DNA of 64,000 bases from Guillardia theta CCMP2712 (lineage: Eukaryota > Protista > Cryptophyta), in the NCBI RefSeq assembly GCF_000315625.1, contig NW_005434595.1, positions 235,826-299,825 on the forward strand, in the 5' to 3' direction. The translations under genes were made by a program, and so were the position numbers. This document shows, piece by piece, positions 3,380 through 62,420 of the stretch; position 1 is the first letter of the stretch, and each line of letters starts with the position of its first letter. The notes beneath the pieces were generated by a model that saw only the letters and a program-made list of their open reading frames with translations, searched no databases and was not told the DNA's origin.

Positions 3380-6300
3380 ATGTTCTGGCGGGGGTTCGCG
3401 TCTACGTCAACCGTGGACCTGGTGATTCCTGGACATTCTTTGATGAGCGCGAGTGGCTGATTTACATGCTTCAAGCTGCTTGATAGCGAGAATTGCACGC
3501 TGGAAGAATTGTTGAAAGACCAGGATCTTATACAGGTGATGACGGGAGGATGTGAAACAAAATTGAAAGGCCTGCCAGGAATGCAAGCAAAGAAATCAAA
3601 AACTTTTGAATTTGTAAGTCAGAGTTCTTTCGAACTTGAAATTTTGTGTAGTTGGACTTTGTTTTGAACACAATCTTAAAAATGTGTATGCTCTGACGAA
3701 TTTTCAAAGTTTATCGAATCCTACGGAGCTTGAAGCTTTGGTGGGATATGTCGTAGACCCTGCTCCTGAAGATGCGGATGAACTCAGAAGAATTGTATTT
3801 CCCTGCAAGGTTTGCATTTTGGATCCATCTTGGGAGCATTTCTTTCTTACGAGTGGTCAGGCATCGGAGATCTTGTCATTGAACTCTGCATTACAAGTTT
3901 TGCTCTTGAATGACGAATCTTTAACTTCAAAGCTTATGAATATGATTGCACAAGGGGTAAGATTCATTTATTTGGAATTTGTTTTCTTGGACTGTGAAGA
4001 CCTGTATCGTTGACTCGTCACTGTCCAGGATGACAAATTTAACGAATTCACGGCCTCGAATTACAGCAAGGTAGACAAGAATTCGATTGGACTACAAGTT
4101 ATCTTCTTGCCTTGTGATGCCAAACATCAGATTCTATGCTCTATACTCAACTTTCGTCCTGACAAAGCAATTATTGCTGTACATTCCGCTGGTTGTCGTA
4201 TGTGGAAATTTTGTGGATGAAGTAATGATTATCAATTCAGGAATTGCACAGCATATCTTCGAATACCTGCACTTAAGCTCTATTCTTGATTTGCTGCTTG
4301 CAGTATGATACTCGTTATATCTTGTTACCTTGTTTTGAATAGTAAGATAGATAATTCATGAGTCGGATGCTATGCTTTCTCGGGGCAATCTTGAAGGTAT
4401 TTACGGTTGTGAGTTTGCATCTGACGTTTGTGCTTGATTAAGACGACATCCCAAATCTGATAACGGAGGCAAATATGGTGCAAAGATTGATTTCCAGATT
4501 GAGTCCAGAGTATCCAGTTGAGGTAGGTGTTTATCTAAATTGTGCGGTGTGGTCATTTTACCACACAATAATTCAATGTGACAGGTTCACGAGAATTCGA
4601 GTTTGGCTTTGGTCACCCTTGTCTGTGCTGTAAGCATTCTCGTGGTGTCTTTACGAGTCATTTACTGCTGGCATGCAGGAGGCATGCTCTGGAGATATCT
4701 TCTTGCCGGAAAATGTTCGATCATTTCTTTCTATCAGGAACGTGTTTTGTCCTGTTCCTGATCGAAATATATCTTAGGTGGATTTTTTGTTGAGTAAGAC
4801 ATTGGGGGAAAATGAAAGTTTAGCGGACTGCGATGAGAAGAGAGCATCTGTTTTAAAATGTGGATTGCAAGTTGTGCTTGAATTCGTGCGACAAGGTTAA
4901 TTGGGTATGATTTGAATGATGCAGAATTGATGTGGTGTGGCAGGACATAAATTGAATGAGGGCCAGGACGACGAACCGTTTAACTTTGAGTTTGATGTAT
5001 TGCATGTTGGTCAATTGTGGACTACTTTGAACTTCCCTTTCCTAGGATGTCTTCTGCCGCACTCCAAGTAGTATTCCGAAGAAGCAAGTGGTATCTTGAA
5101 ATTGATTGTTGTCATTAAGCGTTTGACTCAAATGTAATGAAAGCGAGGGGATACCGGGGGCGTGCAGAAATCACAAGCATTCAACGTTGCATTGAAGCAG
5201 GTTCAATTTCACGAAGTTTGCAACTTTTAGTTATTTATTTGTAATTTCACTTGCCAGATTATGTTGAGAATTAGAGATGTGATCCTGATTTTGAAGAATC
5301 CACCAAGACTTCAGAAGATTGTGAATTCGGTTACAACTATAGATCCACCCTTGGGTTCTGTCAGATTCAAAATCGTCGAGCTGATCCATCTTCTTGTACT
5401 TCTGGACAACATTGATGTTTATTCTGCTTTGGCCGAACATGAAGCTATCCCAATATGTTTGCAATTATTCTTTCAGTATGAGTGGCACAACATGTTGCAT
5501 AATTTGGTGCAGAAGATTTTGGAATTCGTGGTACACTCCGAGGAATGTCTTATCTTACAGAGGACTATCTTTGAAGAAGCGGACTTTTTGAATCGCGTTG
5601 TAAAGGCCTACGCACTGAACGAATCCTATTCTAAACAGCCGAAGACCTCAAGAAAGGTCAAAAGACATTCCGCTGCAAAGTCGTACCCAGTTGTAAAGTG
5701 AATGTACAGGGATACATGGGCCATCTGCGAGTGATATGCAACATGATTATGCAAGCGTCATCGTCGAATAGAATGATTGAATCGCATGTTAGTGAGGTGT
5801 ACCATTCCCACATCGATTGCTTCACAGTTTTGACGTAAATCATTTGTAGCCGTTTTGGAAGAAATTTCTAGAAGAAAATCCTGAGATTCTCGTCGACTTC
5901 AAGGATTCAAAGCAGGTGGGATGTACCCTTGGCCCAAGCAAGCAAGCTAAAACCTTTCAGGGGTTGGCACCGAACAGCATCGAAAGAGAAGTTGATGGGC
6001 AGGAGCTAGAGGTAATGCGAGAATTCTACATTTTGTAATTTGTAGAAGTTTGTTGGTAACAGTTTGCAGGACGGTGACTTCGAGTCCGGGGTTGCTTCAG
6101 CCGCAAGTCTGACAGAAGCGTTCGACAACGAGGTATCGCAACTAGCCGCAAGTTCTCGTTTCCCGCTCGCCCTCTCTCATCTTTTTCGCAGGACTCAGTC
6201 GTTATCGAAGATCAGATTGAAGAGCAGCGGTCTGATATGCATGCAGAATGTGAGGGAATTAAGTGCTTGTTCTCCATGCATGACTTAGTGCAGCGTACTG

Positions 6301-50798: not shown

Positions 50799-53700
50799 TC
50801 ACCTTCCAATAGACTCCACTGCCCCAATGCCCTCAAACCCCAGGACCTGTGGGAGACTTTCAGCTACTGGGCACACTAGCACATGCTCTCAACGTTCTCG
50901 GCGAACGTGCTTGCCATGAAGTCTTCTCGCCTGCTTCGAGGTGAGCTTGCGACCAACAGCAACTTTGACGTTACCCGCTCAGACTCGATCCTGTCAGTCG
51001 GGCGATCGCTGTTTGTATCTCGCTCTCCGACAGAGATTCTCCCATCCGCATCAACATCATTCGCAGCTGCTCCCATTTCAGGATCCCTGTCACTGGCTCT
51101 GCTCCGAGGTGATGGAAGGCCTGGTATGTAGACATGAGGGAGGAGGAGGGTGGCAGTATCAAACCACCTGCTGAATCTCTTCCAGGCTGACATCGTTGAC
51201 AGGCTTGTGATTGACAAACAATTTGATCTGATAGAAACTCAGGGCTGACAACAGCAAGAGTCCTTCCAAACCAAGTCTGAGAAGGTTACAGAATCCTTTC
51301 CCTTCCTTCTGACTTCATGAACCATATCGCGGATCTCGAACTTGGAGGGATAATACCCAAATGCCTGAAGGACTGGTGAGAGAAAAGGGAAGAGTCCTGG
51401 TCAATCTTAACCTGCATCAACTCTGGTACGGCTTCGACGGGGGCCAGCCCTGTAACTTTCCTCTCTTCGGTCGTGTCCTCTCCCTATCACTTCACGTAAG
51501 TCACACCAACGCCGAGAGAGGAGCGGGACCTGAGCTCTTAGCTGAGCCAGGTAGAAATAATCCAGCATCTCGTCGTACAGCTCTCCCCCTTTCCCCCCCG
51601 GGATCAACGCTTCAAACGGCTCGATCCCCGACCCCCCCAGCGCTGCCGATGCCTCTAAGGCGGAGGGGTCCACCTCCCACAAAAAGATCCCACAGTCTGA
51701 CCCTCCTGTTGTCAGCACCAGCTTCCCATCATGTGACGCGCACATCTCCGCCACCTCCCCAGCATGCGCTATCAGCCCCATGCTGCAGTTGGGGTTCCCG
51801 TCCAGTGGCAGCTTGATGAGCCCGACGACCTTGTGAGGGGTCGCGTAGACGACATACTGCTTGCCCTGCTCGTCGGGCGGGAGAGTGAGGAGACGATGAG
51901 GGGGAGGGCCGAAGGTTGGGCCCAAGAGAGTCTGCAGGCAGTGCGAATCTTGTTCCTCGAGCGGTCGATTGTCATGCACGCCGGTCAGACCGATGATATC
52001 CAACACCTGCAGCGAGTGAAAGTGAGAGGAGGAGGAGAAACGAAAGGAGTACGAGGAAAAGGAGGAGGGAGAGGAGGAGGGAGGGGAGGAGACCTTGAGT
52101 TTGCTTTCACTGTTAGCTGATACCAGGAAGATCTTGTTGGGATCTTCTCCTTGCTGACATCCAGGTGGGAGCTGATAAGCTCAAGTCAGTTTAGCAGCTT
52201 TTGCTTCATCTTCTCACCTGTAGGAGGGCTGTGGGCACCGCCGTCTCCTCAATCGTGATCGCACATCGAACGACGACACCTTAGACGAGTGAGGAAGGAG
52301 AAGGAGGGAGGGGAAGGAGAGCGACGATGACTTAAAAAAGGAGACAGGGGGGGTGGGGGGGGCGGAGAAAAGGTGGGAGGTGGTTGAAGGAGATGAGATC
52401 AGGACCTGTGGCTGCCATCGAGCTGGACAAGTCATACTCCACTATCACTCTGTCCTGCGCGAGGGAAACTAGCCGAATGATCCCAGCAGCCTTGTCAAGG
52501 ATGAACTGTAGCCCTACGATCCTGCCGTGATGAGACCTGCCGGTACAGTCACGCAAGGCAGGCGAACTCTCCCGTCTTCACCTGTATCTTCCCACGTACA
52601 GCCATGGCACCTCCTTGCCGCTCTCGAGCACCTGCAAGAGGGTGAGGTAGAGCTGGAGAGACGTCGACTTACATTTCTCTCTCTGCGGAAGATCCCAACG
52701 CAGTTGTGGGCATCTGCAACCGCCACGTGCATGCCATCGGGAGCGAACTGAACCGACGTGATCTCGCAGTCAATCTGGTGGGAAGGGATGAGGAGAGGAA
52801 GCCGCGCGAGGTTGATCCACTTCACCTGAGACATGCGCTGGATGAGCTCGAGGTCCGAGACCCCGATGATCAGCACGGAGCCGTCGGTGCATCCGATGAC
52901 TAGCTCCTGCCCGTTGGGGTTGACGCAGATGCAGGTGGGAGTTCTCTTCTCCAGCACTTTCTGCTGAAGCCAAGCTTGAGACTCGAAGTCCAGCACTCGC
53001 AGCATCCCGCTCGTGGTCACCACGAAGAGCTTGGAGGAAGAGGGATAGGCGCACATAGCGGAGATGGGGGACTCAAAGCCCTGGACGAGAACCTCTCCCT
53101 TTCTCTCCTCCTTGGAGTACTGCTCGAAGATAGCTGCGTTCACCAACGCAATCTTGCCTGCCTTGGTGGCCACAATGAAGTTTGGGATGCGAACCTCGCC
53201 CTCCAGGTAGCCTCCATCCTTAGGAGTCGCGCGGGGAGATGTGAAGGTGAGCGACGCGATGGGTCCGACGTCGAGGTCTTCGTACCAAGCAAGGAGGCGG
53301 AACTTGAGGTCATAGAAGCGCACGAAGCCGTCGGCGCCTGCGGTGACGAGGAAGCTGTCGAAGACGGAGATGAAGGTGATGGCGTGACCATCGTGAAGCT
53401 TGAGCAGCTTGACGGCACATCGGTCCGAGGGCCTCGCGTCAAGAGCAGGGAGAAGAACTTGATCCCAGAGAAGGAGGTCACCGTCCTCTGTCGCCGAGAC
53501 AGCCTGGTTGGAGAAGGGGATGAAGACACTCTGTGTGAACTTGCCGACAGGGGATGAGAACTCCTTGGAGGACAGGGCAGGCGAGTAGAACTTCAACTTG
53601 TCGTCTGTGGAAGAAAGTCACAGGAAGACGAGGAGGGAAACAGAGTGGCAGGAGGAGGAGGAGGAGGAGGAGGAGGAGGAGGAGGAGGAGGAGGAGGAGG

Positions 53701-54319: not shown

Positions 54320-54817
54320 CTGACACAGAGGTCATCAACCTATGTTTGGCTCACTCGCCTGAGTTTCCCTCTGATACGTTTGAACAGATTCATCTTGACC
54401 TCAAATCTCCATCCATGGCTAATGCTCACTATCCACATAATTTCTCTGGTTTCTGCCTGACACTTTCGCTTGCTAGCTTTTTCTTTCCAACCTCTTTCGG
54501 CTGCATGCTGAGGACCTACTTTTGTAATGCCCCTCCTCGCTCATCCCGTATCATCAGGTCTCACCCCTTGTTCCCCAATGCTTTGTCTCGACATCGTCTG
54601 CTCTCATGCACAACGTTTGTTGTCCCATGTCCTCACCTGATATCCTCGTCTCCCTTCCTGTCTCTCCTCCAACTTCCATCCTCTGTCCCTCTCTTCTCTC
54701 TCTGTCCCTCGTTCCTCCTTCTATCCTCCCTCCTCTTCCTCTTTCTCCTCGCTCTCCTTCTCCCTCCTCTCTGTCTCTGTCTCTGTCTCTTCTCTCCCTC
54801 TTCCCCCCCCCCCCCCC

Positions 54818-54917
54818 NNNNNNNNNNNNNNNNNNNNNNNNNNNNNNNNNNNNNNNNNNNNNNNNNNNNNNNNNNNNNNNNNNNNNNNNNNNNNNNNNNN
54901 NNNNNNNNNNNNNNNNN
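54818..54917. other. Assembly gap (100 N) flanked by poly-C, (GTCTCT)n and (CCT)n simple repeats
   Basis: N run. Poly-C at 54803-54817, gtctct array at 54918-54968, cct array at 54970-55010. Confidence 0.98.
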
Positions 54918-55545
54918 GTCTCTGTCTCTGTCTCTGTCTCTGTCTCTGTCTCTGTCTCTGTCTCTGTCGCCTCCTCCTCCTCCTCCTCCTCCTCCTCCTC
55001 CTCCTCCTCCTGCATCCCCTTGTCTGCCTCACGGCATTGCGTCATGTCCGTTGATTGCCTCATCCCCGCTCAACTCTCACTCCTCTTCACTACCCCCACA
55101 CCTGCCACCAACCTACCACTACCACCCTACCTCAATACGGCATATTATCCCCTGGATAGCCTAACTCTGATAACCCCTACCCCCTAGGACACCTCTCTTT
55201 TCGTGGTAAAGTACCGGTCATTCACACTACCCCTACATCCCTTTGGACCCTTCCCGGTTTGAATTTCGCGCCACGCCTGGAGAAGCACCAGGCAAGTGGC
55301 GTGCGAGTTGCGAAATGAGGGGCGGGGAAGGAAGCGGAGGAGAGGAGAGAAGCGAGAGAAGACGAACATGCGCTGAGAACTGAACTTGAAGGTTGCCACC
55401 ACGAGGGCAGGTAAGCATTGACTGCTATCGTGATGAGAAAGGTGATGGTTCTGACTACATAACCCAGTCACTCGCAGTGTGCCCCCCGTCACTTTTTGCA
55501 GACAATCTCATCAAACCCCTTGTGACCAGCAGGAAGATATCAAGA

Positions 55546-58500
55546 ATGACATGCTGGTCTTCTGTATATATCAAGATCATTCTCGTGTTTGCCTTTGCAA
55601 ATGGATCAAGGACTTTCATCACAGAGACTGTGTCTCCACACATCAGTACCTTTTCTCGTTACAGTGTAGAACGAAATTCTCTTGGCTTTTCCGTTTGTTG
55701 TCTTCGAGGAGGATTGGATGGAGTCGAGAGCAACCTTCCAAATCGGATAAGTAGTACGATGAAGGCCCAAACAAGGCTTGATGCTCAGGATAGCGTGAAA
55801 GGCATTTCAAAAGTTGCGAAGATACGAAAGTTTACATCGTCTTCCAAATCTTTGAAGGATAAGAGGTTCGAGATTAAGTTGGTACTGACAAGCAGATACA
55901 AGTTTGCTGCAGTATCGAGTTTTCCGCCTCGAACAGTTACAGATCTATACAAGAAAATGATGGGCAAGTTCGAGATTGAGAACAAGCGATGGGTGTTTCC
56001 TTTGTGCCAGTATTACAAACTCGTGAATGAGATCTCAAGAATGAATGCGACTCAGCCAGCAAATTCCACCTTCAGCCTCACTCCAGTGCCAGAAAACGTC
56101 TTCAAGGTCCTCAAGAACGACCCTTCGGTCTCCACCTTGAACCACACGAAAGCGAAGATGCTGTTGGAGGCCCTACCGTTGACCATCAGCAAGAAGCTGC
56201 TCCCTTTCCAGCGAGAGGGAGTTCTCTTCGGACTAGCAAGAGAGGGGCGAGTGCTCATCGGAGATGAGATGGGGTTAGGGAAGACTGTACAGGCGATCGC
56301 CATTGCAGCAGCATACCTGGATGAGTGGCCTCTGTTAATTGTATGCCCCTCCTCAATGCGGTGTATGTGGGCACAGGAGCTGGTGAATTGGCTTCCAGGC
56401 GAGCTGACCCCTCAAGACGTTAACACCATCTTCAGCGGGAGGGATGTCGTCGGGAATCAGCTTGTCACCATCATATCCTACGACCTCTTCTGCAAGTTTG
56501 CGCCGGAGATCAGCTCGATGCAGTTCAAAGTGATCATCGGCGATGAGAGCCACTATCTCAAGAACCCCAACGCGAAGAGGAGTAAGACCATCCTCCCCTT
56601 CATCCGCTCGGCCAGAAGATCGATCTTGCTCACCGGAACGCCTGCGCTCTCAAGACCCGTCGAACTGTTCAACCTCTTGAATTCCCTTCACCCTCGTCTC
56701 TTTAACAATTTCTTGGAATTCGCATATCGTTACTGTGATGCCCACCAGGGCCCCTTCGGCCTGGAGACCAGCGGGGCATCAAACTTGGAGGAGCTTCACG
56801 TGCTCTTGGATCAACACACGATGGTTCGAAGGCTCAAGAAGGACGTTCTCACCCAGCTGCCCGCCAAGAGAAGGCAGAAGATTTTGATCAAGATCTCAGA
56901 AGCTGAGAGCAAGAGATTTGCTACGGAGATGGATAAGCTGAAAGAGCTGGAGCGTGTTACTCAGGATGAGGAGGAGGACAGCGAAGCTCGATTTCGGGCG
57001 CAGTCACGCAAGAAGGCGCTGATCATGAAGATGTATGTGGACACTGGAGTTGCCAAACTTCAAGCGATCCAGGAGTATGTTGCCGACCTGATCGAATGCG
57101 GAGCAAAGTTTCTGGTGCAAACTCTCTTTTTTTCGCCTACCACCCTGCCCCACTCCCTCCTCAAACTCGCCTTCCTTCTCCTCTTCCCCGTCCTCTTCTC
57201 CTTCCCGTCTCTTCCTCCGCATACCAGCCCCCGCATACCAGCCTCTTTGCCTCCTACTGATGGCTGTACTCAGGTGTTCGCTCATCACATGGAGATTCTG
57301 GATGGGCTGGAGGACGTCGTCTCCAAGAAGAAAGTGCAGTACATCAGAATCGATGGCTCCACCCCCTCCCGGGAACGGCAGCTGAGAGTCTCTTCCTTCC
57401 AGGAGTCCAGCTCTGTCCGAGTAGCCATCCTCTCAGTCACAGCAGCTGGGACAGGGCTGACCCTCACGGCCGCAAACTTGGTAAGGGCGAACAACTTAGC
57501 TGGGTTTTGACTGAACTCTTCTCAGGTGGTTTTTGCTGAGCTCCACTGGACCCCAGGGATTCTGCTGCAGGCAGAGGACAGGGCTCACAGGATCGGTCAG
57601 CAGTCGTCGGTGAACGTGATGTACCTGGTGGGTCAGGGGACGTGCGACGAGCTGATATGGGACAGCATCTCCTACAAGGTCAAAGTGATAGGAAGAGCCC
57701 TGGACGGAATGCGAACAAGCTTCAATGCTGCGAGGATGGAAGTGAACCGTTCCTCCGCTCCTCCTCCTCCTGCTCCTTGTGCAGATGACGAGTGGCCTGC
57801 AGAGGAAGACAAGCTCAGTGCTCTCCTACAACACCCGGTCATCATCGCAGCCATGCAGAATCCCCTCCTCGATCAGATCCTTGACAAAGTCCTCCAAGAC
57901 CCTTCCCTTGCCAACGATGAGAGCGTGCTGGAGCGCTATGGCAGCAACCCTGAGATTCGCGAGGTCTTCGCGGTCATCAAGGAGTTCATGAAGAGCAGAG
58001 GAGGGGAGGAGAAGGAGGAGGCGCCGGACAGCGGGAACACCAGCAGGTGCCGAGGGAGAGCAGCAGGTTGCGGGGTGAGGAGTGAGCCCTTCAAGATGCA
58101 GAGGAGCTGCGCCATGAGCCTCCGAGGGGGAGGAGGAGGAGGAGGAGGAGACATTATCACGATGAAGGATGACGCTGGTCTGTTCTCAAGGGATTTCATG
58201 GAGAATTGTAGGCTAAAGGACGAGCTGAGAAGGATGCAGTCGGAACTCGAGAGGAGCAGGAGAGAAATCGAAGTGCTGCGAACAAGGAAGTTTGACCCAG
58301 TCTGCTCGAGCGTATCAGATGGCGAGTCTTTGGGGTATAAGCTTTGCTCCTCCGGCTCGCCTCCTCCTTTCTCTCGTCGAGATGATGTCCCTTCCATCGA
58401 GAGCAGTAGGGGTAGCAGGGAGCAAGAAAATCAGCTCTCAAGCGTCTCGAGAGGTCCCAATGAGATTCAATCCTTCACCACGAGCAGGGGGAATCTCGTT

Positions 58501-59310
58501 AAGATCGAAGAGCTTCCGGATGACGCTGAAGTCGATGGCTGGGAAGAGGAGGAAGGGCGGAACGGATTTGTTCTCGCTGAGGTGCCACCACTGACAGGAG
58601 GTTTATCAGATGGAGCAACAGCGGGAGCAGCAGAAGAGGCGGGGGCGGAGGGAGGAGGAGCTTCGCGAGTGCTGGACGAGCTCAACTCGCTCGCACGAGA
58701 GTTTCCTTCCTGCGTGCAGTACCTGAAGCGCGAGTTTGACAACCGACGGCTGCTGACGGAGACAGGGCGATCGATCAACGAGGAGAGGCTCAAGGGCATC
58801 ATGAAGCGGGTGGCGAGAAAGAGCGGCAATCCTGACGTGAAGCTCATGGCGCTCTACATCGGAGCCAAGTTGGGAGGGGAGGACACTGCCGGGCCCTCTC
58901 GCATCATCCCGACTGACCTGCAGCCGCTGGAGGGGGGCGACAAGGAGCAAGACAGCTTGCTGCGCTCGTGCAGCTGCAGCCTGTCCAACTCCATGAAGTG
59001 CACTTGCCATCAGCGCGGCAAGGGCCACAACCCCTTGCAGCCGTCGCTGGCCAGCAGGAAGAGCACAGTCATCCGCAGGACGTGGGGGGAGGTGGTTGTG
59101 ACCCCCCAGCAGGTCTGCGAGCAAGTGGAGAGGATGGGGGGCATGGAGGCTGTGGATGGGAGGCAGGGGACGAAGGGGAAGGGATGGAAGGGAGTCGCAA
59201 AGGCCCTGGGAATCGACACGGAGAAGTACCGAGACGCAGGATATCAGATGAGAAAGATCTACTATATGGAGACTTCGGGCTTCGATACGCGGAGGAAGAG
59301 AAGGAAATGA
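55546..59310 (+). CDS. SMARCAL1: SNF2-family SMARCAL1/ZRANB3-like annealing helicase with N-terminal signal-like leader and C-terminal STI1-like and ARID-like domains, 3 exons
   Basis: Introns 57115-57273 and 57481-57525. HARP-like segment (GKFEIENKRWVFPLCQYYKLV); LLPFQREGV..GRVLIGDEMGLGKTVQAI; DESH; LLTGTPALSRPVELF; KFL|VFAHH; IRIDGSTP; VAILSVTAAGTGLTLTAANL|VVFAELHWTPGILLQAEDRAHRIGQ. Confidence 0.9.
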
Positions 59311-59363
59311 AACAAGTCAAGCCAGCAGCATGGCCCCTCTCGGCCCCTCTCCTCCCCCTTCCC

Positions 59364-61887
59364 TCATGGCTGGACGCGGCCCTTGGCCCAGTCTTTCATC
59401 TCCTCCTCCTCCTTGCTCGTGGACGCGAACGCTCGACCCGAGTCGACCGCTCGCTCCTTCCTCGCCATCTTCACAGCCTCATCGAACTTGCTCTTCGCAA
59501 GCCCGTTGGTGGGGTCCAGCCGGAAAGCCTCCCAGAAAGATGCGGCTGCTTCCGTGGGGTCCTTGAGCCCCAGATACGCCTGCCACCATTCTCAGCTGAC
59601 CTGCTGGGGATCAGCTCAAGCGCAGCACCTGCCCTTCCCGGAAGCAAGCCTTTGCCCAGCTGCTGTCCATGGCCTTCGCTGTCTGCCACAAAGAGCTCAG
59701 CACCTCCTTGGCAAGATGAAGGAGCAAGTACCTGTGCGTCGGCCAGTGCTTCTTCATGACGCTGGAGGGCGAGGAGAGCTGCGCATCGGTTGGAGAAGAA
59801 CTCTTTCCTGCTGGGGTCCAGTAGGATAGCTTCAGTGTAGAACGCGTACGCTTCCTCCATCTTGTTGCTACGAAGAGCCTCGTTGCCTTTCTCCTTGAAA
59901 ACGACAGCCTGTGAAGTAAATGAGACTCTGCCGAGCTTCACACTCTCTCGCCTTCTCAGCTCGTGACAATTGCTGGCTGCTACCCGACGTCTGCGCCGGT
60001 CCTCCAGTCTGCACAGTGCCGCTGTTTCCCGTGCTCGACATGGTAGGAGCAGGCTCGGGCTCGGAAGAATCTTCATCCTCTTCCTCCTCATCACTATCAC
60101 CGCACAGCTCTGAATCGCTCAGATTCCTCCCCAAGGAGATGAGAATGTCGCGCATATTCTGATACCTCTGCGACTTCCTCCAGCGGTAGCGTGCAAGTTG
60201 CAACGGCGTCTGCCCAACATCGTCAACAGCGCGCCGCCTCCTCTTATCCCCACAAGGCCAGACCTTGCCATGCACGTTTTTCGCCGCTACGTCGCATCCC
60301 CTCTCGACCAGCAGTCGAAACAGGTCTACGTTGCCAGTCTCAGCTGCGAAGTGAAGCGCCGTGAATCCCTCCTGCCGCGACAATGAGCCGAGAAGCGGGC
60401 ACGAGGCTGCACCTGATCGCACAGGGACAAGTTTGCTCCTGCCCCAACGTAGAGCTCGCACATCTGAGGTAGAGGTGAGGGTCTGCTGAGTTATCGGCAT
60501 TCCAAGCTCACCCTGTGCTGGTTCATCGAAGCTGCCATCACGAGAGGTGGAGGTACCTTCCTCCCTCCCTCGTCCGAGGGCAGAACGTTGGGATCCGCCC
60601 CCAAGGTAATCAGCAACTTCACTGCCTCCTCGCACTCCGACATCGCAGCCCACTGGAAGGAGCGAGTGAGGCGATCGAAGTGGAGGAAGATGGAGGAGAG
60701 GAAGAAGAGGAGGATGCACGGGACAAGGAGCGAGGGGAGGGAGAGGGAGAGTTGTCAACCTGAAGAGCAGATCCAAGAATGGAGGTAGCATTCACGTTTG
60801 CGTTCATCAGCATGAGCATGTGAATCATCTGCAGGTCGCCGTTGCCAGCAGCGTGATGAAGGGGTGTAGCTCTCAGCCCAGCGTCTTTCTCGTTGACATC
60901 CACAGAGACATTTCGAGCTACAAGTCTCGCAGCCTCCATGCGCTTGTTCACAACTGCAATGAAGAACGGACTCTGACCATTCTCATCCCTTGCCTTCATG
61001 TCGGCTCCCGCCCTCATAGCAAGCTTTATCACCTCAACATGACCCTCTGCTGCTGCCCAGTGGACCACTCCTCGAGCATTGGCATCCTTGAACGCGTCGA
61101 GAATCACGTTAGGCGGCTCTGAACGAGCCTTGCACTCATGCTCTAGAGCCTTTTCTAGTTCAGCGAGTCTATTTTCCTTGGCAGCTACAAGCAGTCGCTC
61201 AAGCGCTTGCCGTTCGATCATCATCGTCTTAACCTTGGAGGAGGACTCAAGATCTTGGAAGCTTTTGTCTCGTTTGTCTTGCCTGTTATCTTCTGTCGGA
61301 TCCGGCTCTGTTGAATTTTCCCCCTCCAATCCGTCCGCTCCATCCGCGTCATCGTGCCACGAAGCTGGAAAGGTGGGAATATCTTCAAGAACGAGCTTGG
61401 AAACTTTCTGAAGTTTCGGCCAAAGAACATCTATATCAGCTTTGGGGAGGCGAATGAGAATGTATTTGTCTTTGATCTTGAAAGTTGCTCTAGACGCGTC
61501 GATTTCGAAGAACAGCTCACTGATAGTAAGATCCCACCGTGAGCACACGAGTGAGAACCCTGTAGTTCTTGCTTGGAAACTGAAATCATCTGCAGAGAGC
61601 TTTCGTTCAGATGTCTTGTTCTCCTTCGATTCATCATCAAACACAAAAATTTGCACCTCTCCGGCTGTCTGGTCCCATCCATACCTGGGGATTTCAGTCC
61701 CCCCCCGCAAGCGAATTGCCAAGTTCCTGCTCGTTCCAAGAGAACAACCATGGAGGGACAAGGCAGGAGCTGCTGCTCTTACTCTTGTGTGTGATCCTCC
61801 TGCCATCATCCTTCCTCCTGCCATCCAGCCAACCGCAAGCAGCATTCCTGCCAGCAGCCGCTGTTGTCCCCCGAATCCTGCTGCCAT
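59364..61887 (-). CDS. CS (p23/NudC-like) + ankyrin repeat + TPR co-chaperone-like protein with N-terminal leader, multi-exon (alternative start 62004)
   Basis: PRYGWDQTAGEVQIFV...LFFEIDASRATFKIKDKYILIRLPKA (CS). VHWAAAEGHVEVIK, ATPLHHAAGNGD, FTALHFAAETGN (ANK). FKEKGNEALRSNKMEEAYAFYTEAILLDP...FFSNRCAA and AYLGLKDPTEAAASFWEAFRLDPTN (TPR). Confidence 0.85.
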
Positions 61888-61999
61888 TGCCGATCTCCAG
61901 AGTAATAAACCCTCAAGTCGCCGACCCGGCCCGGGCCGGGCCTCGGACTGGCGGCCGCCTCTAAAAAATAGTAAAACAAAACAAATTAGATAACTTGGT

Positions 62000-62420
62000 G
62001 CCATGAAACCCGCCTCGGGATGTCAATAACAGGGGTGGGGTACACATGTCCTGCAAGGGGTACATATCAAGCCATAGATTCATACCACCGGTAGTCTTTG
62101 GGGTACCCTCCATCACCCTACCAATGTCCCACCTACTGGTACCCACGTGAACTAGCTGATGCTTGCAACCCTCACCAATCATATGACCCTACCTAGGTAG
62201 AATCTTTGATCACCCTGGTCCTATGTCTGAAATCTATCGAGAGGGTGGGGTACTTGCACCGGGGGTTAGGTGGTGTTCTAGAGTGAGCAGTATTTTACCA
62301 CAAATGGTCTTCGTGAATCACCAGTTTCATATTGAGCCTTCCTGCAACTGAATTTTATAACTTGAGTAAATATTTTATAATACAAAAGCTGTGGTTTGGG
62401 GTACTACTATCAATATATAG
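62000..62420. repeat. GGGT/ACCC/GGTACC motif mosaic in a divergent spacer
   Basis: ggggtggggtac, ggggtaccc, ctggtacccac, gggtggggtac. Confidence 0.6.

What the first reader, a model, noticed from the sequence alone, without database searches (positions are those of the whole stretch)
55546..61887. Signal peptide + ubiquitin-tail mimic (LRGG / IRLRGG) on two adjacent nucleo-cytosolic-type proteins
Seen: the helicase starts MTCWSSVYIKIILVFAFANG, then a Ser/Arg-rich stretch, then CLRGG (55702-55713). The CS-ANK-TPR protein has a hydrophobic leader (RLLAGMLLAVGWMAGG), a basic/Ala-rich stretch, then IRLRGG (61699-61716) directly before the CS domain. Established: ubiquitin ends in LRLRGG and deubiquitinases cut after GG; algae with complex red plastids import proteins with bipartite leaders through the ERAD-derived, ubiquitin-dependent SELMA system. 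Inference: the motif is a presequence-processing site cut by a DUB-like protease in the periplastidal compartment. RGG motifs in algal presequences may have been noted before, so novelty is unverified.
Basis: partly seen in the sequence, partly recalled or inferred. Interest (0 to 1): 0.75.

Follow-up and report, generated by a model that had tools for sequence, protein, structure and literature searches.

The report
LRGG-ended periplastid import leaders
Two neighbouring genes of the alga Guillardia theta, a DNA-annealing helicase and a chaperone-helper protein, begin with an import leader for the relict endosymbiont cytoplasm and nucleus, and that leader ends in LRGG, ubiquitin's last four residues, a conserved and apparently undescribed mark that is probably where the leader is cut off.

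Summary
The window is Guillardia theta nuclear DNA (cryptophyte).

- **The two leaders.** A SMARCAL1-like SNF2 helicase (+ strand) and a CS-ankyrin-TPR protein (- strand) each start with a hydrophobic signal-like stretch and a 30-35 residue spacer. The spacer ends in LRGG at 55702-55713 in the helicase and in IRLRGG at 61699-61716 in the CS protein.
- **Not chance.** 10 of 12 CS-protein orthologues keep L-x-G-G just before the CS domain while the rest of the leader drifts. Hanusia phi keeps CCLRGGL in the helicase.
- **Genome-wide.** LRLRGG-coding DNA occurs 353 times, against 92 and 144 for the Gly-to-Ala variants. Of 20 unselected matches, 12 sit 20-70 residues after a signal-like start, against a 4.2% background (p about 3e-12).
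- **Link to the periplastid compartment.** The same leader type precedes eEF1A (abutting its mature N-terminus), three starch synthases and the leader-bearing Dre2 copy. One light-harvesting gene whose N-terminus I could read lacks it.
- **Not shown.** Cleavage after GG and a deubiquitinase-type enzyme are inferred only. The helicase mRNA 5' end is unresolved.

This scan has already noted the same motif many times elsewhere in this genome (63 notes). I found no paper describing it in the library searched. These two genes are further, well-conserved members of the class.

The parts
55546..55605 (+). Helicase leader, signal-peptide-like hydrophobic start (20 residues ending ...FAFANG)
   Evidence: Hydrophobic window score about 2.25. 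The FAFANG part is kept in Hanusia phi P0122.
55606..55701 (+). Helicase leader spacer (32 residues, Ser/Thr/Arg-rich)
   Evidence: Only 15 of 29 aligned residues are identical to Hanusia, in frame and without stops.
55702..55713 (+). LRGG motif of the helicase leader (context CCLRGGL)
   Evidence: 7 of 7 residues are identical in Hanusia, flanked by 52% and 36% identical segments.
55546..57729 (+). SMARCAL1-like annealing helicase gene. Exons are 55546-57114, 57274-57480 and 57526 onward (3' end not resolved); introns are 57115-57273 and 57481-57525. A HARP-like block lies at about 55867-56025 and the SNF2 domain at 56209-56973.
   Evidence: Pfam SNF2-rel_dom 2e-36 and Helicase_C. The annotated partial model P0121 fixes the two introns. 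Homologues are named SMARCAL1 by their sources.
61813..61887 (-). CS-ANK-TPR leader: start codon 61887-61885 and signal-like hydrophobic stretch (...RLLAGMLLAVGWMAGG)
   Evidence: This is the annotated start of GUITHDRAFT_143837 (P0001). Orthologues P0003, P0244, P0246 and P0250 have clear hydrophobic N-termini.
61699..61716 (-). IRLRGG motif, ending 3 residues before the CS domain
   Evidence: L, G, G are kept in 10 of 12 orthologues; position -3 is R x7, K, Q or S.
59376..61887 (-). CS-ankyrin-TPR gene. CS domain 61441-61689; ankyrin repeats 60784-61065 and in later exons; TPR 59810-59905. Seven introns: 60653-60759, 60464-60511, 60371-60411, 60210-60263, 59907-59949, 59683-59731, 59579-59627.
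   Evidence: Pfam. Spliced transcript contigs from three RNA-type runs show all seven joints with GT..AG on the minus strand. Contigs X9 record 14 and X8 record 13 run 813 and 834 nt beyond 61049, to about 61862 and 61883 if colinear.
61960..61962 (-). Candidate splice or spliced-leader acceptor (polypyrimidine tract + TAG), 73 nt before the start codon with no ATG between
   Evidence: Sequence. Spliced-leader trans-splicing is described for G. theta (PMC5619915). Use of this site is an inference.
55499..55501 (+). Candidate acceptor (..cactttttgcag) 44 nt before ATG 55546. A second candidate lies at about 55662-55663, inside the leader ORF.
   Evidence: Use of either site was not shown, because read depth was too low.

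Best explanation
Both genes encode proteins sent from the host cytosol into the periplastid compartment (PPC), the relict cytoplasm of the red-algal endosymbiont. The helicase probably goes on into the nucleomorph. Each leader has three parts: a signal peptide for entry into the ER, a variable basic and hydroxylated spacer (the transit-peptide-like part that carries the chain across the periplastid membrane), and a conserved L-x-G-G junction, here LRGG and IRLRGG. The junction is a selected functional element of cryptophyte PPC leaders. Most likely it is the site where the leader is removed once the protein has arrived, leaving a near-native N-terminus. What is shown: the motif, its conservation, its genome-wide enrichment behind signal-like starts, and its association with PPC-type cargo. 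What is inferred: PPC localisation of these two proteins, cleavage at the motif, and the kind of protease.
For: - **Organism and genes.** G. theta, with a SNF2/SMARCAL1-like helicase and a CS-ANK-TPR protein.
- **CS gene expression.** It is expressed and spliced. Transcript contigs run over the end of the laid stretch far enough to cover the motif and nearly reach the start codon.
- **CS protein conservation.** In 12 orthologues at 23-51% identity, 10 keep L-x-G-G 2-21 residues before the CS domain (A3). In the three orthologues found first, only 3 of 76 alignment columns upstream of the motif are invariant.
- **Helicase conservation.** CCLRGGL is 7/7 identical in Hanusia, inside a region that is 36-52% identical. 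The alternative Met at 55759 is not kept in Hanusia.
- **Genome-wide counts.** The LRLRGG-type pattern gives 353 matches, against 92 (LRLRGA-type) and 144 (LRLRAG-type).
- **Unselected sample.** 12 of the first 20 listed matches have a signal-like Met 20-70 aa upstream, against a 4.2% background (p=2.8e-12).
- **Protein-level selection.** Codons for L, R and G vary freely.
- **Junction position.** In L016 the motif is followed directly by GKEK..., and the GTP_EFTU model starts at residue 4 after GG.
- **Starch synthases.** Three GT5 starch-synthase loci carry signal-like start + LRGG. That cryptophyte starch is made in the PPC is my own knowledge (Deschamps 2006, which is not held).
- **Dre2.** Of the two CIAPIN1 (Dre2) loci, only the C8 locus has a signal-like start plus ...TLCLRGG upstream. 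G. theta PPC Dre2 leaders went to the PPC in a diatom (PMC6105332).
- **Plastid control.** One light-harvesting gene in L018 has the classic ...ASASA|F leader and no LRGG; the other's N-terminus lies outside the ORF I read.
Against: - No experiment or proteomic N-terminus shows cleavage after GG.
- Signal peptides were judged by hydrophobicity only.
- The helicase mRNA 5' end is unresolved. Read depth was too low, the annotated model is partial and starts downstream, and a candidate acceptor at about 55663 would cut the leader out.
- Hanusia P0122 retains an intron, so it may derive from unspliced RNA or DNA.
- Five more distant helicase homologues of unknown taxon have a hydrophobic start followed by ...MWLSG(R/K/N)xGGS, not LRGG.
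- Two CS orthologues (P0248, P0249) lack the motif, possibly because their N-termini are truncated or miscalled.
- In single ORFs of the Nbp35 loci I could not see a clean LRGG leader.
- Whether the signal + LRGG ORF and the CIAPIN1 match at the C8 locus belong to one gene is my inference.
Confidence: 0.6

Rival explanations
1. The motif is a recognition, sorting or retention signal rather than a cut site. It might keep cargo in the PPC instead of letting it pass on through the plastid envelope, or engage ubiquitin-handling parts of the SELMA import machinery. The leader would then be removed elsewhere or not at all.
For: The motif is specific to PPC-type cargo and absent from the one plastid light-harvesting leader I could read. 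In some members it lies well before the first recognisable domain: about 50 residues in the helicase and 73 in starch synthase L037.
Against: In eEF1A it abuts the native N-terminus exactly, and in the CS protein family it always lies 2-21 residues before the fold. This is what a junction or cut site predicts. A retention signal need not sit at the junction.
Confidence: 0.17
2. The leader is cut at or near the motif by a protease that is not ubiquitin-type. One candidate is an M16 processing peptidase (MPP/SPP-like) reading Arg at -2/-3; another is a different PPC endopeptidase. The likeness to ubiquitin's tail would then be convergent or coincidental.
For: Position -3 tolerates R, K, Q and S. 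No ubiquitin fold precedes the tail, and most deubiquitinases need that fold (established knowledge). ptDUP is absent from cryptophytes (PMC12412216).
Against: Both glycines are strictly needed: the Gly-to-Ala variants show no genome-wide excess. Leu at -4 is invariant. L-x-G-G is the classic minimal site of ubiquitin-type and papain-like viral proteases, not of M16 enzymes. The diatom stromal cleavage motif is [A/S]-L-x|[A/S/M] (PMC3774753).
Confidence: 0.2
3. For the helicase only: the leader is untranslated 5' sequence, and the protein starts at Met 55759 (MKAQ...) after splicing or trans-splicing at about 55663. Its LRGG would then be irrelevant.
For: There is a polypyrimidine + CAG acceptor-like site at about 55650-55663. 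The annotated model lacks the leader. No transcript contig covers 55450-55649.
Against: The frame is open from 55393 through the helicase domains. Hanusia keeps the frame and the motif and has no Met at the MKAQ position. A second acceptor-like site at 55501 would make ATG 55546 the first AUG.
Confidence: 0.12
4. A chance tetrapeptide plus chance hydrophobic ORF starts.
For: LRGG is short, and first-stage readers look at many windows.
Against: The motif is conserved in 10 of 12 orthologues. 12 of 20 unselected genome-wide matches have leaders, against a 4.2% background. The excess is specific to GG.
Confidence: 0.02

Closest known systems
Bipartite targeting signals of periplastid-compartment proteins in cryptophytes and diatoms (signal peptide + transit-peptide-like part with a non-aromatic first residue; Gould et al. 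2006, as summarised in PMC6105332 and PMC4494062)
   Same: A signal-like start followed by a basic, hydroxylated spacer on nucleo-cytosolic-type cargo. G. theta leaders of this kind reach the PPC in diatoms.
   Different: The published rule concerns only the residue after the signal-peptide cut. A conserved L-x-G-G at the far end of the leader is not mentioned in any paper I could search.
C-terminal tails of ubiquitin, NEDD8 and ISG15 (…LRLRGG / …LRGG), cut or deconjugated by USP, UCH and ULP-type proteases
   Same: The last 4-6 residues are identical (RLRGG in the CS protein), and both glycines are strictly required.
   Different: No beta-grasp fold lies upstream. Position -3 varies among orthologues. 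Cleavage was not shown.
L-x-G-G cleavage sites of papain-like viral proteases and clan CE proteases (coronavirus PLpro; adenovirus protease, (M/I/L)-x-G-G|x); cited from my own knowledge
   Same: The same minimal core (Leu at -4, Gly-Gly at -2/-1, free -3 and +1), read in an unfolded chain without a ubiquitin fold.
   Different: Those are viral polyprotein sites. No such protease has been tied to the cryptophyte PPC.
Stromal transit-peptide cleavage motif of diatoms ([A/S]-L-x|[A/S/M]; PMC3774753)
   Same: It marks the end of an import leader in an alga with a complex red plastid.
   Different: Different sequence, different compartment (stroma) and a known enzyme class (SPP). The one plastid light-harvesting leader I could read lacks LRGG.
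Double-glycine leader peptides of bacteriocins (cut by C39 peptidase domains); cited from my own knowledge
   Same: The leader ends in GG and is cut right after it.
   Different: Those are bacterial and Sec-independent, with a different upstream consensus. There is no evidence of a C39 enzyme here.

Membership tests
Cryptophyte PPC-directed bipartite leader | N-terminal ER signal peptide | tested here: met
   Both leaders have hydrophobic 10-residue windows of about 2.3-2.4, against a threshold of 1.9 that only 4.2% of ORF positions meet. Orthologues share hydrophobic starts. This is a heuristic only; no SignalP was available.
Cryptophyte PPC-directed bipartite leader | Transit-peptide-like spacer: net positive, Ser/Thr-rich, few acidic residues | tested here: met
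   Helicase spacer: 3 Arg, 2 Glu and many Ser/Thr. CS spacer: 4 Arg and no acidic residue (sequences).
Cryptophyte PPC-directed bipartite leader | First residue after the signal-peptide cut is not aromatic or Leu | tested here: inconclusive
   The cut site could not be predicted with the tools here. Plausible sites (after ...FAFA or ...FANG; after ...WMAGG) give N, S or R. The light-harvesting control shows ...ASASA|F.
Cryptophyte PPC-directed bipartite leader | Localisation in the PPC or nucleomorph | not testable with these tools
   Only indirect evidence: the same leader type sits on starch synthases, eEF1A and the leader-bearing Dre2 copy, and PMC6105332 reports localisation of G. theta CIA-factor leaders.
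Ubiquitin-like modifier tail processed by deubiquitinases | C-terminal-type sequence L-R-G-G (ubiquitin: LRLRGG) | tested here: met
   LRGG at 55702-55713; IRLRGG at 61699-61716.
Ubiquitin-like modifier tail processed by deubiquitinases | Beta-grasp ubiquitin fold preceding the tail | tested here: not met
   No Pfam family (ubiquitin included) matched 10 leaders at E<=10. The leaders are 35-63 residues long including the signal peptide.
Ubiquitin-like modifier tail processed by deubiquitinases | Hydrolysis after Gly-Gly by a ubiquitin-type cysteine protease | not testable with these tools
   No proteomic or biochemical data were available. ptDUP is reported absent from cryptophytes (PMC12412216).
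SMARCAL1/HARP annealing helicases | SNF2 ATPase core (SNF2-related domain + Helicase_C) | tested here: met
   PF00176 at 2e-36 and PF00271 at 8e-8. The best named homologues are SMARCAL1.
SMARCAL1/HARP annealing helicases | HARP domain upstream of the ATPase core | tested here: inconclusive
   PF07443 did not match at E<=0.01. However, a block conserved in all close homologues lies at about 55867-56025, where HARP lies in SMARCAL1.
CS-domain (p23/Sgt1-type) co-chaperone-like proteins | CS domain plus peptide-binding repeats | tested here: met
   PF04969 scores 22.5 bits (cut-off 21.3); ankyrin repeats 1.6e-12; TPR_1 3e-7. Any co-chaperone function is inferred from the domains only.

The most novel reading that the evidence does not exclude
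L-x-G-G is the cut site of a PPC-resident ubiquitin-type protease that also serves as the missing cryptophyte counterpart of the SELMA deubiquitinase. One enzyme would then both strip ubiquitin from imported chains and remove their leaders. This would be presequence processing by ubiquitin-tail mimicry, a mechanism not known for any organelle.
Probability: 0.25. Interest if true: 0.85.

Novelty: new variant of a known kind. Interest (0 to 1): 0.68.

Why it matters
How periplastid proteins are told apart from plastid proteins beyond the first transit-peptide residue is an open question, and so is how their leaders are removed. A strict, conserved L-x-G-G junction offers three things:

- a simple sequence rule for predicting the cryptophyte periplastid and nucleomorph proteome, estimated at a few hundred genes from the six-residue form alone;
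- a precise site to mutate;
- a concrete enzyme hypothesis, a ubiquitin-type protease, in a lineage where the known periplastid deubiquitinase is missing.

For this window it predicts two things. The nucleomorph imports a host-encoded SMARCAL1-type fork-repair helicase. The periplastid cytoplasm has a family of CS-ankyrin-TPR chaperone-adaptor proteins, which I found only in Guillardia, Hanusia and unnamed metagenome or transcriptome sequences.

Tried and rejected
- **Raw RNA reads (X20).** They gave one read on the stretch, and the helicase is too weakly expressed in the contig runs to fix its 5' end. Its presence in mRNA rests on contigs that run over the end.
- **Fragment search.** A word search with the CS N-terminal piece found nothing. 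The exhaustive search did find orthologues.
- **AlphaFold2 on P0001 1-210 without an alignment.** Mean pLDDT was 37, which is uninformative.
- **Ubiquitin-remnant test on leaders.** No match, so I reject the idea that leaders are decayed ubiquitin units.
- **Nbp35 (ParA family) loci.** No clean signal + LRGG in single ORFs. L029 shows ALRVRGG without a signal stretch in the same ORF. Inconclusive.
- **Nar1 loci.** Nothing seen.
- **Genome sampling.** So there is no unbiased estimate of how many genes carry the four-residue form, and no screen of deubiquitinase or ULP genes for the leader.
- **Reversed-pattern control.** The tool's reversed control for LRLRGG is inflated (255), so I used Gly-to-Ala variants as controls instead.
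- **Papers not available.** Deschamps 2006 (PPC starch) and the supplements of PMC6105332 are not held.
- **Spliced models.** All searches used single-exon references or database proteins.


Full report
**What is there.** The window is nuclear DNA of the cryptophyte Guillardia theta CCMP2712. The 461-aa ORF at 60622-62004 (-) is 100% identical to GUITHDRAFT_143837, and the helicase ORF matches GUITHDRAFT_76774. The window is contig C79:235826-299825 of the assembly. Two convergent genes fill 55.5-61.9 kb.

*Helicase (+ strand).* This is a SNF2 helicase (SNF2-rel_dom 2e-36, Helicase_C). Its named homologues are SMARCAL1, the annealing helicase. Comparison with the annotated partial model gives introns at 57115-57273 and 57481-57525.

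*CS-ankyrin-TPR protein (- strand).* Pfam finds a CS domain, ankyrin repeats and a TPR. Transcript contigs from three RNA-type runs confirm seven introns of 41-107 nt. Queries were single exons by reference or database proteins.

**The observation.**
- ATG 55546 opens a 20-residue hydrophobic start. A Ser/Thr/Arg-rich spacer follows, then CCLRGG, with LRGG at 55702-55713.
- On the minus strand, ATG 61887 (the annotated start) opens a hydrophobic stretch and a basic, Ala-rich spacer. IRLRGG follows at 61699-61716, three residues before the CS domain.
- Met-to-GG lengths are 56 and 63 residues.

**Are the leaders in the mRNA?**

*CS gene: yes, as far as contigs can show.* A 2,096-nt and a 1,098-nt spliced transcript contig run 813 and 834 nt beyond the end of the laid stretch (61049). 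If colinear, they reach about 61862 and 61883. A polypyrimidine + TAG acceptor-like site lies 73 nt before the start codon, with no ATG between. This fits the spliced-leader trans-splicing reported for at least a fifth of G. theta genes (PMC5619915).

*Helicase: unresolved.* Only pieces at 55837-56075 and 56329-56613 are listed, and the annotated model is partial. Two acceptor-like sites exist. One at 55501 would make ATG 55546 the first AUG. One at about 55663 would remove the leader.

The argument for translation is comparative. The Hanusia phi sequence P0122 keeps the frame through the leader and lacks a Met at the alternative start. Its identity to G. theta by segment is:

| Segment | Identical residues |
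|---|---|
| Spacer | 15/29 |
| CCLRGGL | 7/7 |
| Following linker | 18/50 |
| From the HARP-like block on | 64/76 |

P0122 retains an intron, so it is not proof of a mature mRNA.

**Is the motif more than chance?**

*Conservation in the CS family.* The word search gave Hanusia (GIRLRGG) and a metagenomic orthologue with a clear signal peptide (ALRLSGG). The exhaustive search added nine more relatives at 26-41% identity. In the 12-sequence alignment A3, 10 sequences have L-x-G-G 2-21 residues before the invariant ...WDQ start of the CS domain. Leu and both Gly are kept in all 10. Position -3 is R seven times and K, Q and S once each. Nothing else upstream is conserved (in the three orthologues found first, 3 of 76 columns). 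The two sequences without the motif begin only 25-40 residues before the domain and may be miscalled.

*Genome-wide counts.*

| DNA pattern encoding | Matches | Tool's reversed control |
|---|---|---|
| [L/F][R/S][L/F][R/S]GG | 353 | 255 |
| same with final Gly-to-Ala | 92 | 104 |
| same with penultimate Gly-to-Ala | 144 | 145 |

*Unselected sample.* I fetched 10 kb around the first 20 listed matches; the list runs in contig order and is not ranked. In 12 of them a Met followed by a hydrophobic, charge-free window lies 20-70 residues upstream in the same ORF, and two more are borderline. The background is 4.2% of all positions in ORFs of 50 aa or more in the same DNA (binomial p=2.8e-12). Both lines suggest roughly 200-260 loci for the six-residue form alone. 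Codons for Leu, Arg and Gly vary freely among members, so selection acts on the protein.

**What compartment?** The cargo is nucleo-cytosolic or otherwise PPC-type.
- **eEF1A.** In L016 the leader ends ...SM-LRLRGG and is followed directly by GKEK.... The GTP_EFTU model starts at residue 4 after GG, so the motif replaces the initiator Met exactly.
- **Starch synthases.** Three GT5 loci carry signal + LRGG (L037, L038, L044), and two more carry LRLRGG or LRLKGG without a visible signal exon. That cryptophyte starch is made in the PPC is my own knowledge; the paper was not held.
- **Dre2.** Of the two CIAPIN1 (Dre2) loci, only the C8 locus shows a signal + ...TLCLRGG leader upstream. That the leader ORF and the CIAPIN1 match belong to one gene is my inference. 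Grosche et al. 2018 found one cytosolic and one PPC Dre2, and showed that G. theta PPC CIA-factor leaders take GFP to the PPC of a diatom (PMC6105332).
- **Other cargo.** Others include a SAM methyltransferase and a RETICULATA-like membrane protein.
- **Plastid control.** Of the two light-harvesting genes in my sample, the one whose N-terminus I could read has the classic ...ASASA|F plastid leader and no LRGG. This negative control is very small.

**Mechanism.**

*Shown.* A three-part leader whose last part is a strictly conserved L-x-G-G at the junction with the mature protein.

*Inferred.* The motif is where the leader is cut off after SELMA-dependent entry into the PPC. The junction position, best seen in eEF1A, supports this.

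In its favour:
- both glycines are strictly required;
- Leu at -4 is invariant;
- -3 and +1 are free, which is the L-x-G-G logic of ubiquitin-type and papain-like proteases;
- no Pro occurs at +1 in 18 members, which is not significant;
- the cryptophyte PPC uses ubiquitin but lacks ptDUP, so an unidentified enzyme is expected (PMC12412216).

Against it:
- there is no ubiquitin fold upstream;
- no enzyme candidate was identified;
- no cleavage data exist.

A non-ubiquitin-type peptidase, or a sorting role without cleavage, cannot be excluded.

**Caveats specific to the helicase.** Five more distant homologues (48-49% identity, on high-GC metagenome contigs of unknown taxon) have a hydrophobic start followed by a conserved ...DDYASMRSMWLSG(R/K/N)xGGS block instead of LRGG. 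The metagenomic CS orthologue P0003, also on a high-GC contig of unknown taxon, has LRLSGG. The motif may be more degenerate in that lineage, or the block may be unrelated.

**Known or new?** The bipartite PPC leader is textbook. I found no paper that links LRGG, LRLRGG or an RGG motif to plastid, periplastid or cryptophyte leaders. The library lacks most subscription papers, including Gould 2006 and Patron & Waller 2007. Within this scan the same motif has been noted many times on other parts of this genome (63 notes), and earlier follow-ups reached the same reading. I treated those as leads and re-derived the enrichment, the Gly-specific control, the PPC link and the orthologue conservation independently.

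**Verdict.** These two genes are well-conserved further members of the class.

Noticed in passing
window 15549-50593 (+): Three abutting giant ORFs (550, 8255 and 2878 aa) form about 35 kb of almost uninterrupted reading frame. The product is Ser/Thr/Asn-rich, poor in charged residues, and has Cys-containing repeated modules. It has a hydrophobic signal-like start and no Pfam family. It looks like one secreted or surface repeat protein of more than 11,000 aa.
   Followed up: partly
window 58120-58131 (+): A third LRGG (...CAMS-LRGG-GGGGGGD...) lies in the ORF 57526-59310, downstream of the helicase core. No hydrophobic leader precedes it in the ORF. RNA contigs start near 58070, and a sub-threshold ARID match lies near the ORF's end. 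It may be a separate gene or the helicase's C-terminal extension.
   Followed up: partly
window 52514-53596 (-): A WD40 beta-propeller ORF.
   Followed up: no
window ~54700-54900: A 100-N assembly gap flanked by CT/GA microsatellite and poly-Pro/poly-Glu-coding repeats.
   Followed up: no
L017 (G000:C4:63102-73101), + strand, 4869-5549: A RETICULATA-like membrane protein carries a signal + LRLRGG leader. This suggests that membrane proteins of the periplastid or outer-envelope side use the same leader type.
   Followed up: partly
window 57481-57525 and the seven introns of the CS gene: The introns are very short (41-159 nt) with canonical GT..AG ends. Polypyrimidine + YAG acceptor-like sites lie just upstream of both start codons, in line with the reported spliced-leader trans-splicing.
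   Followed up: partly
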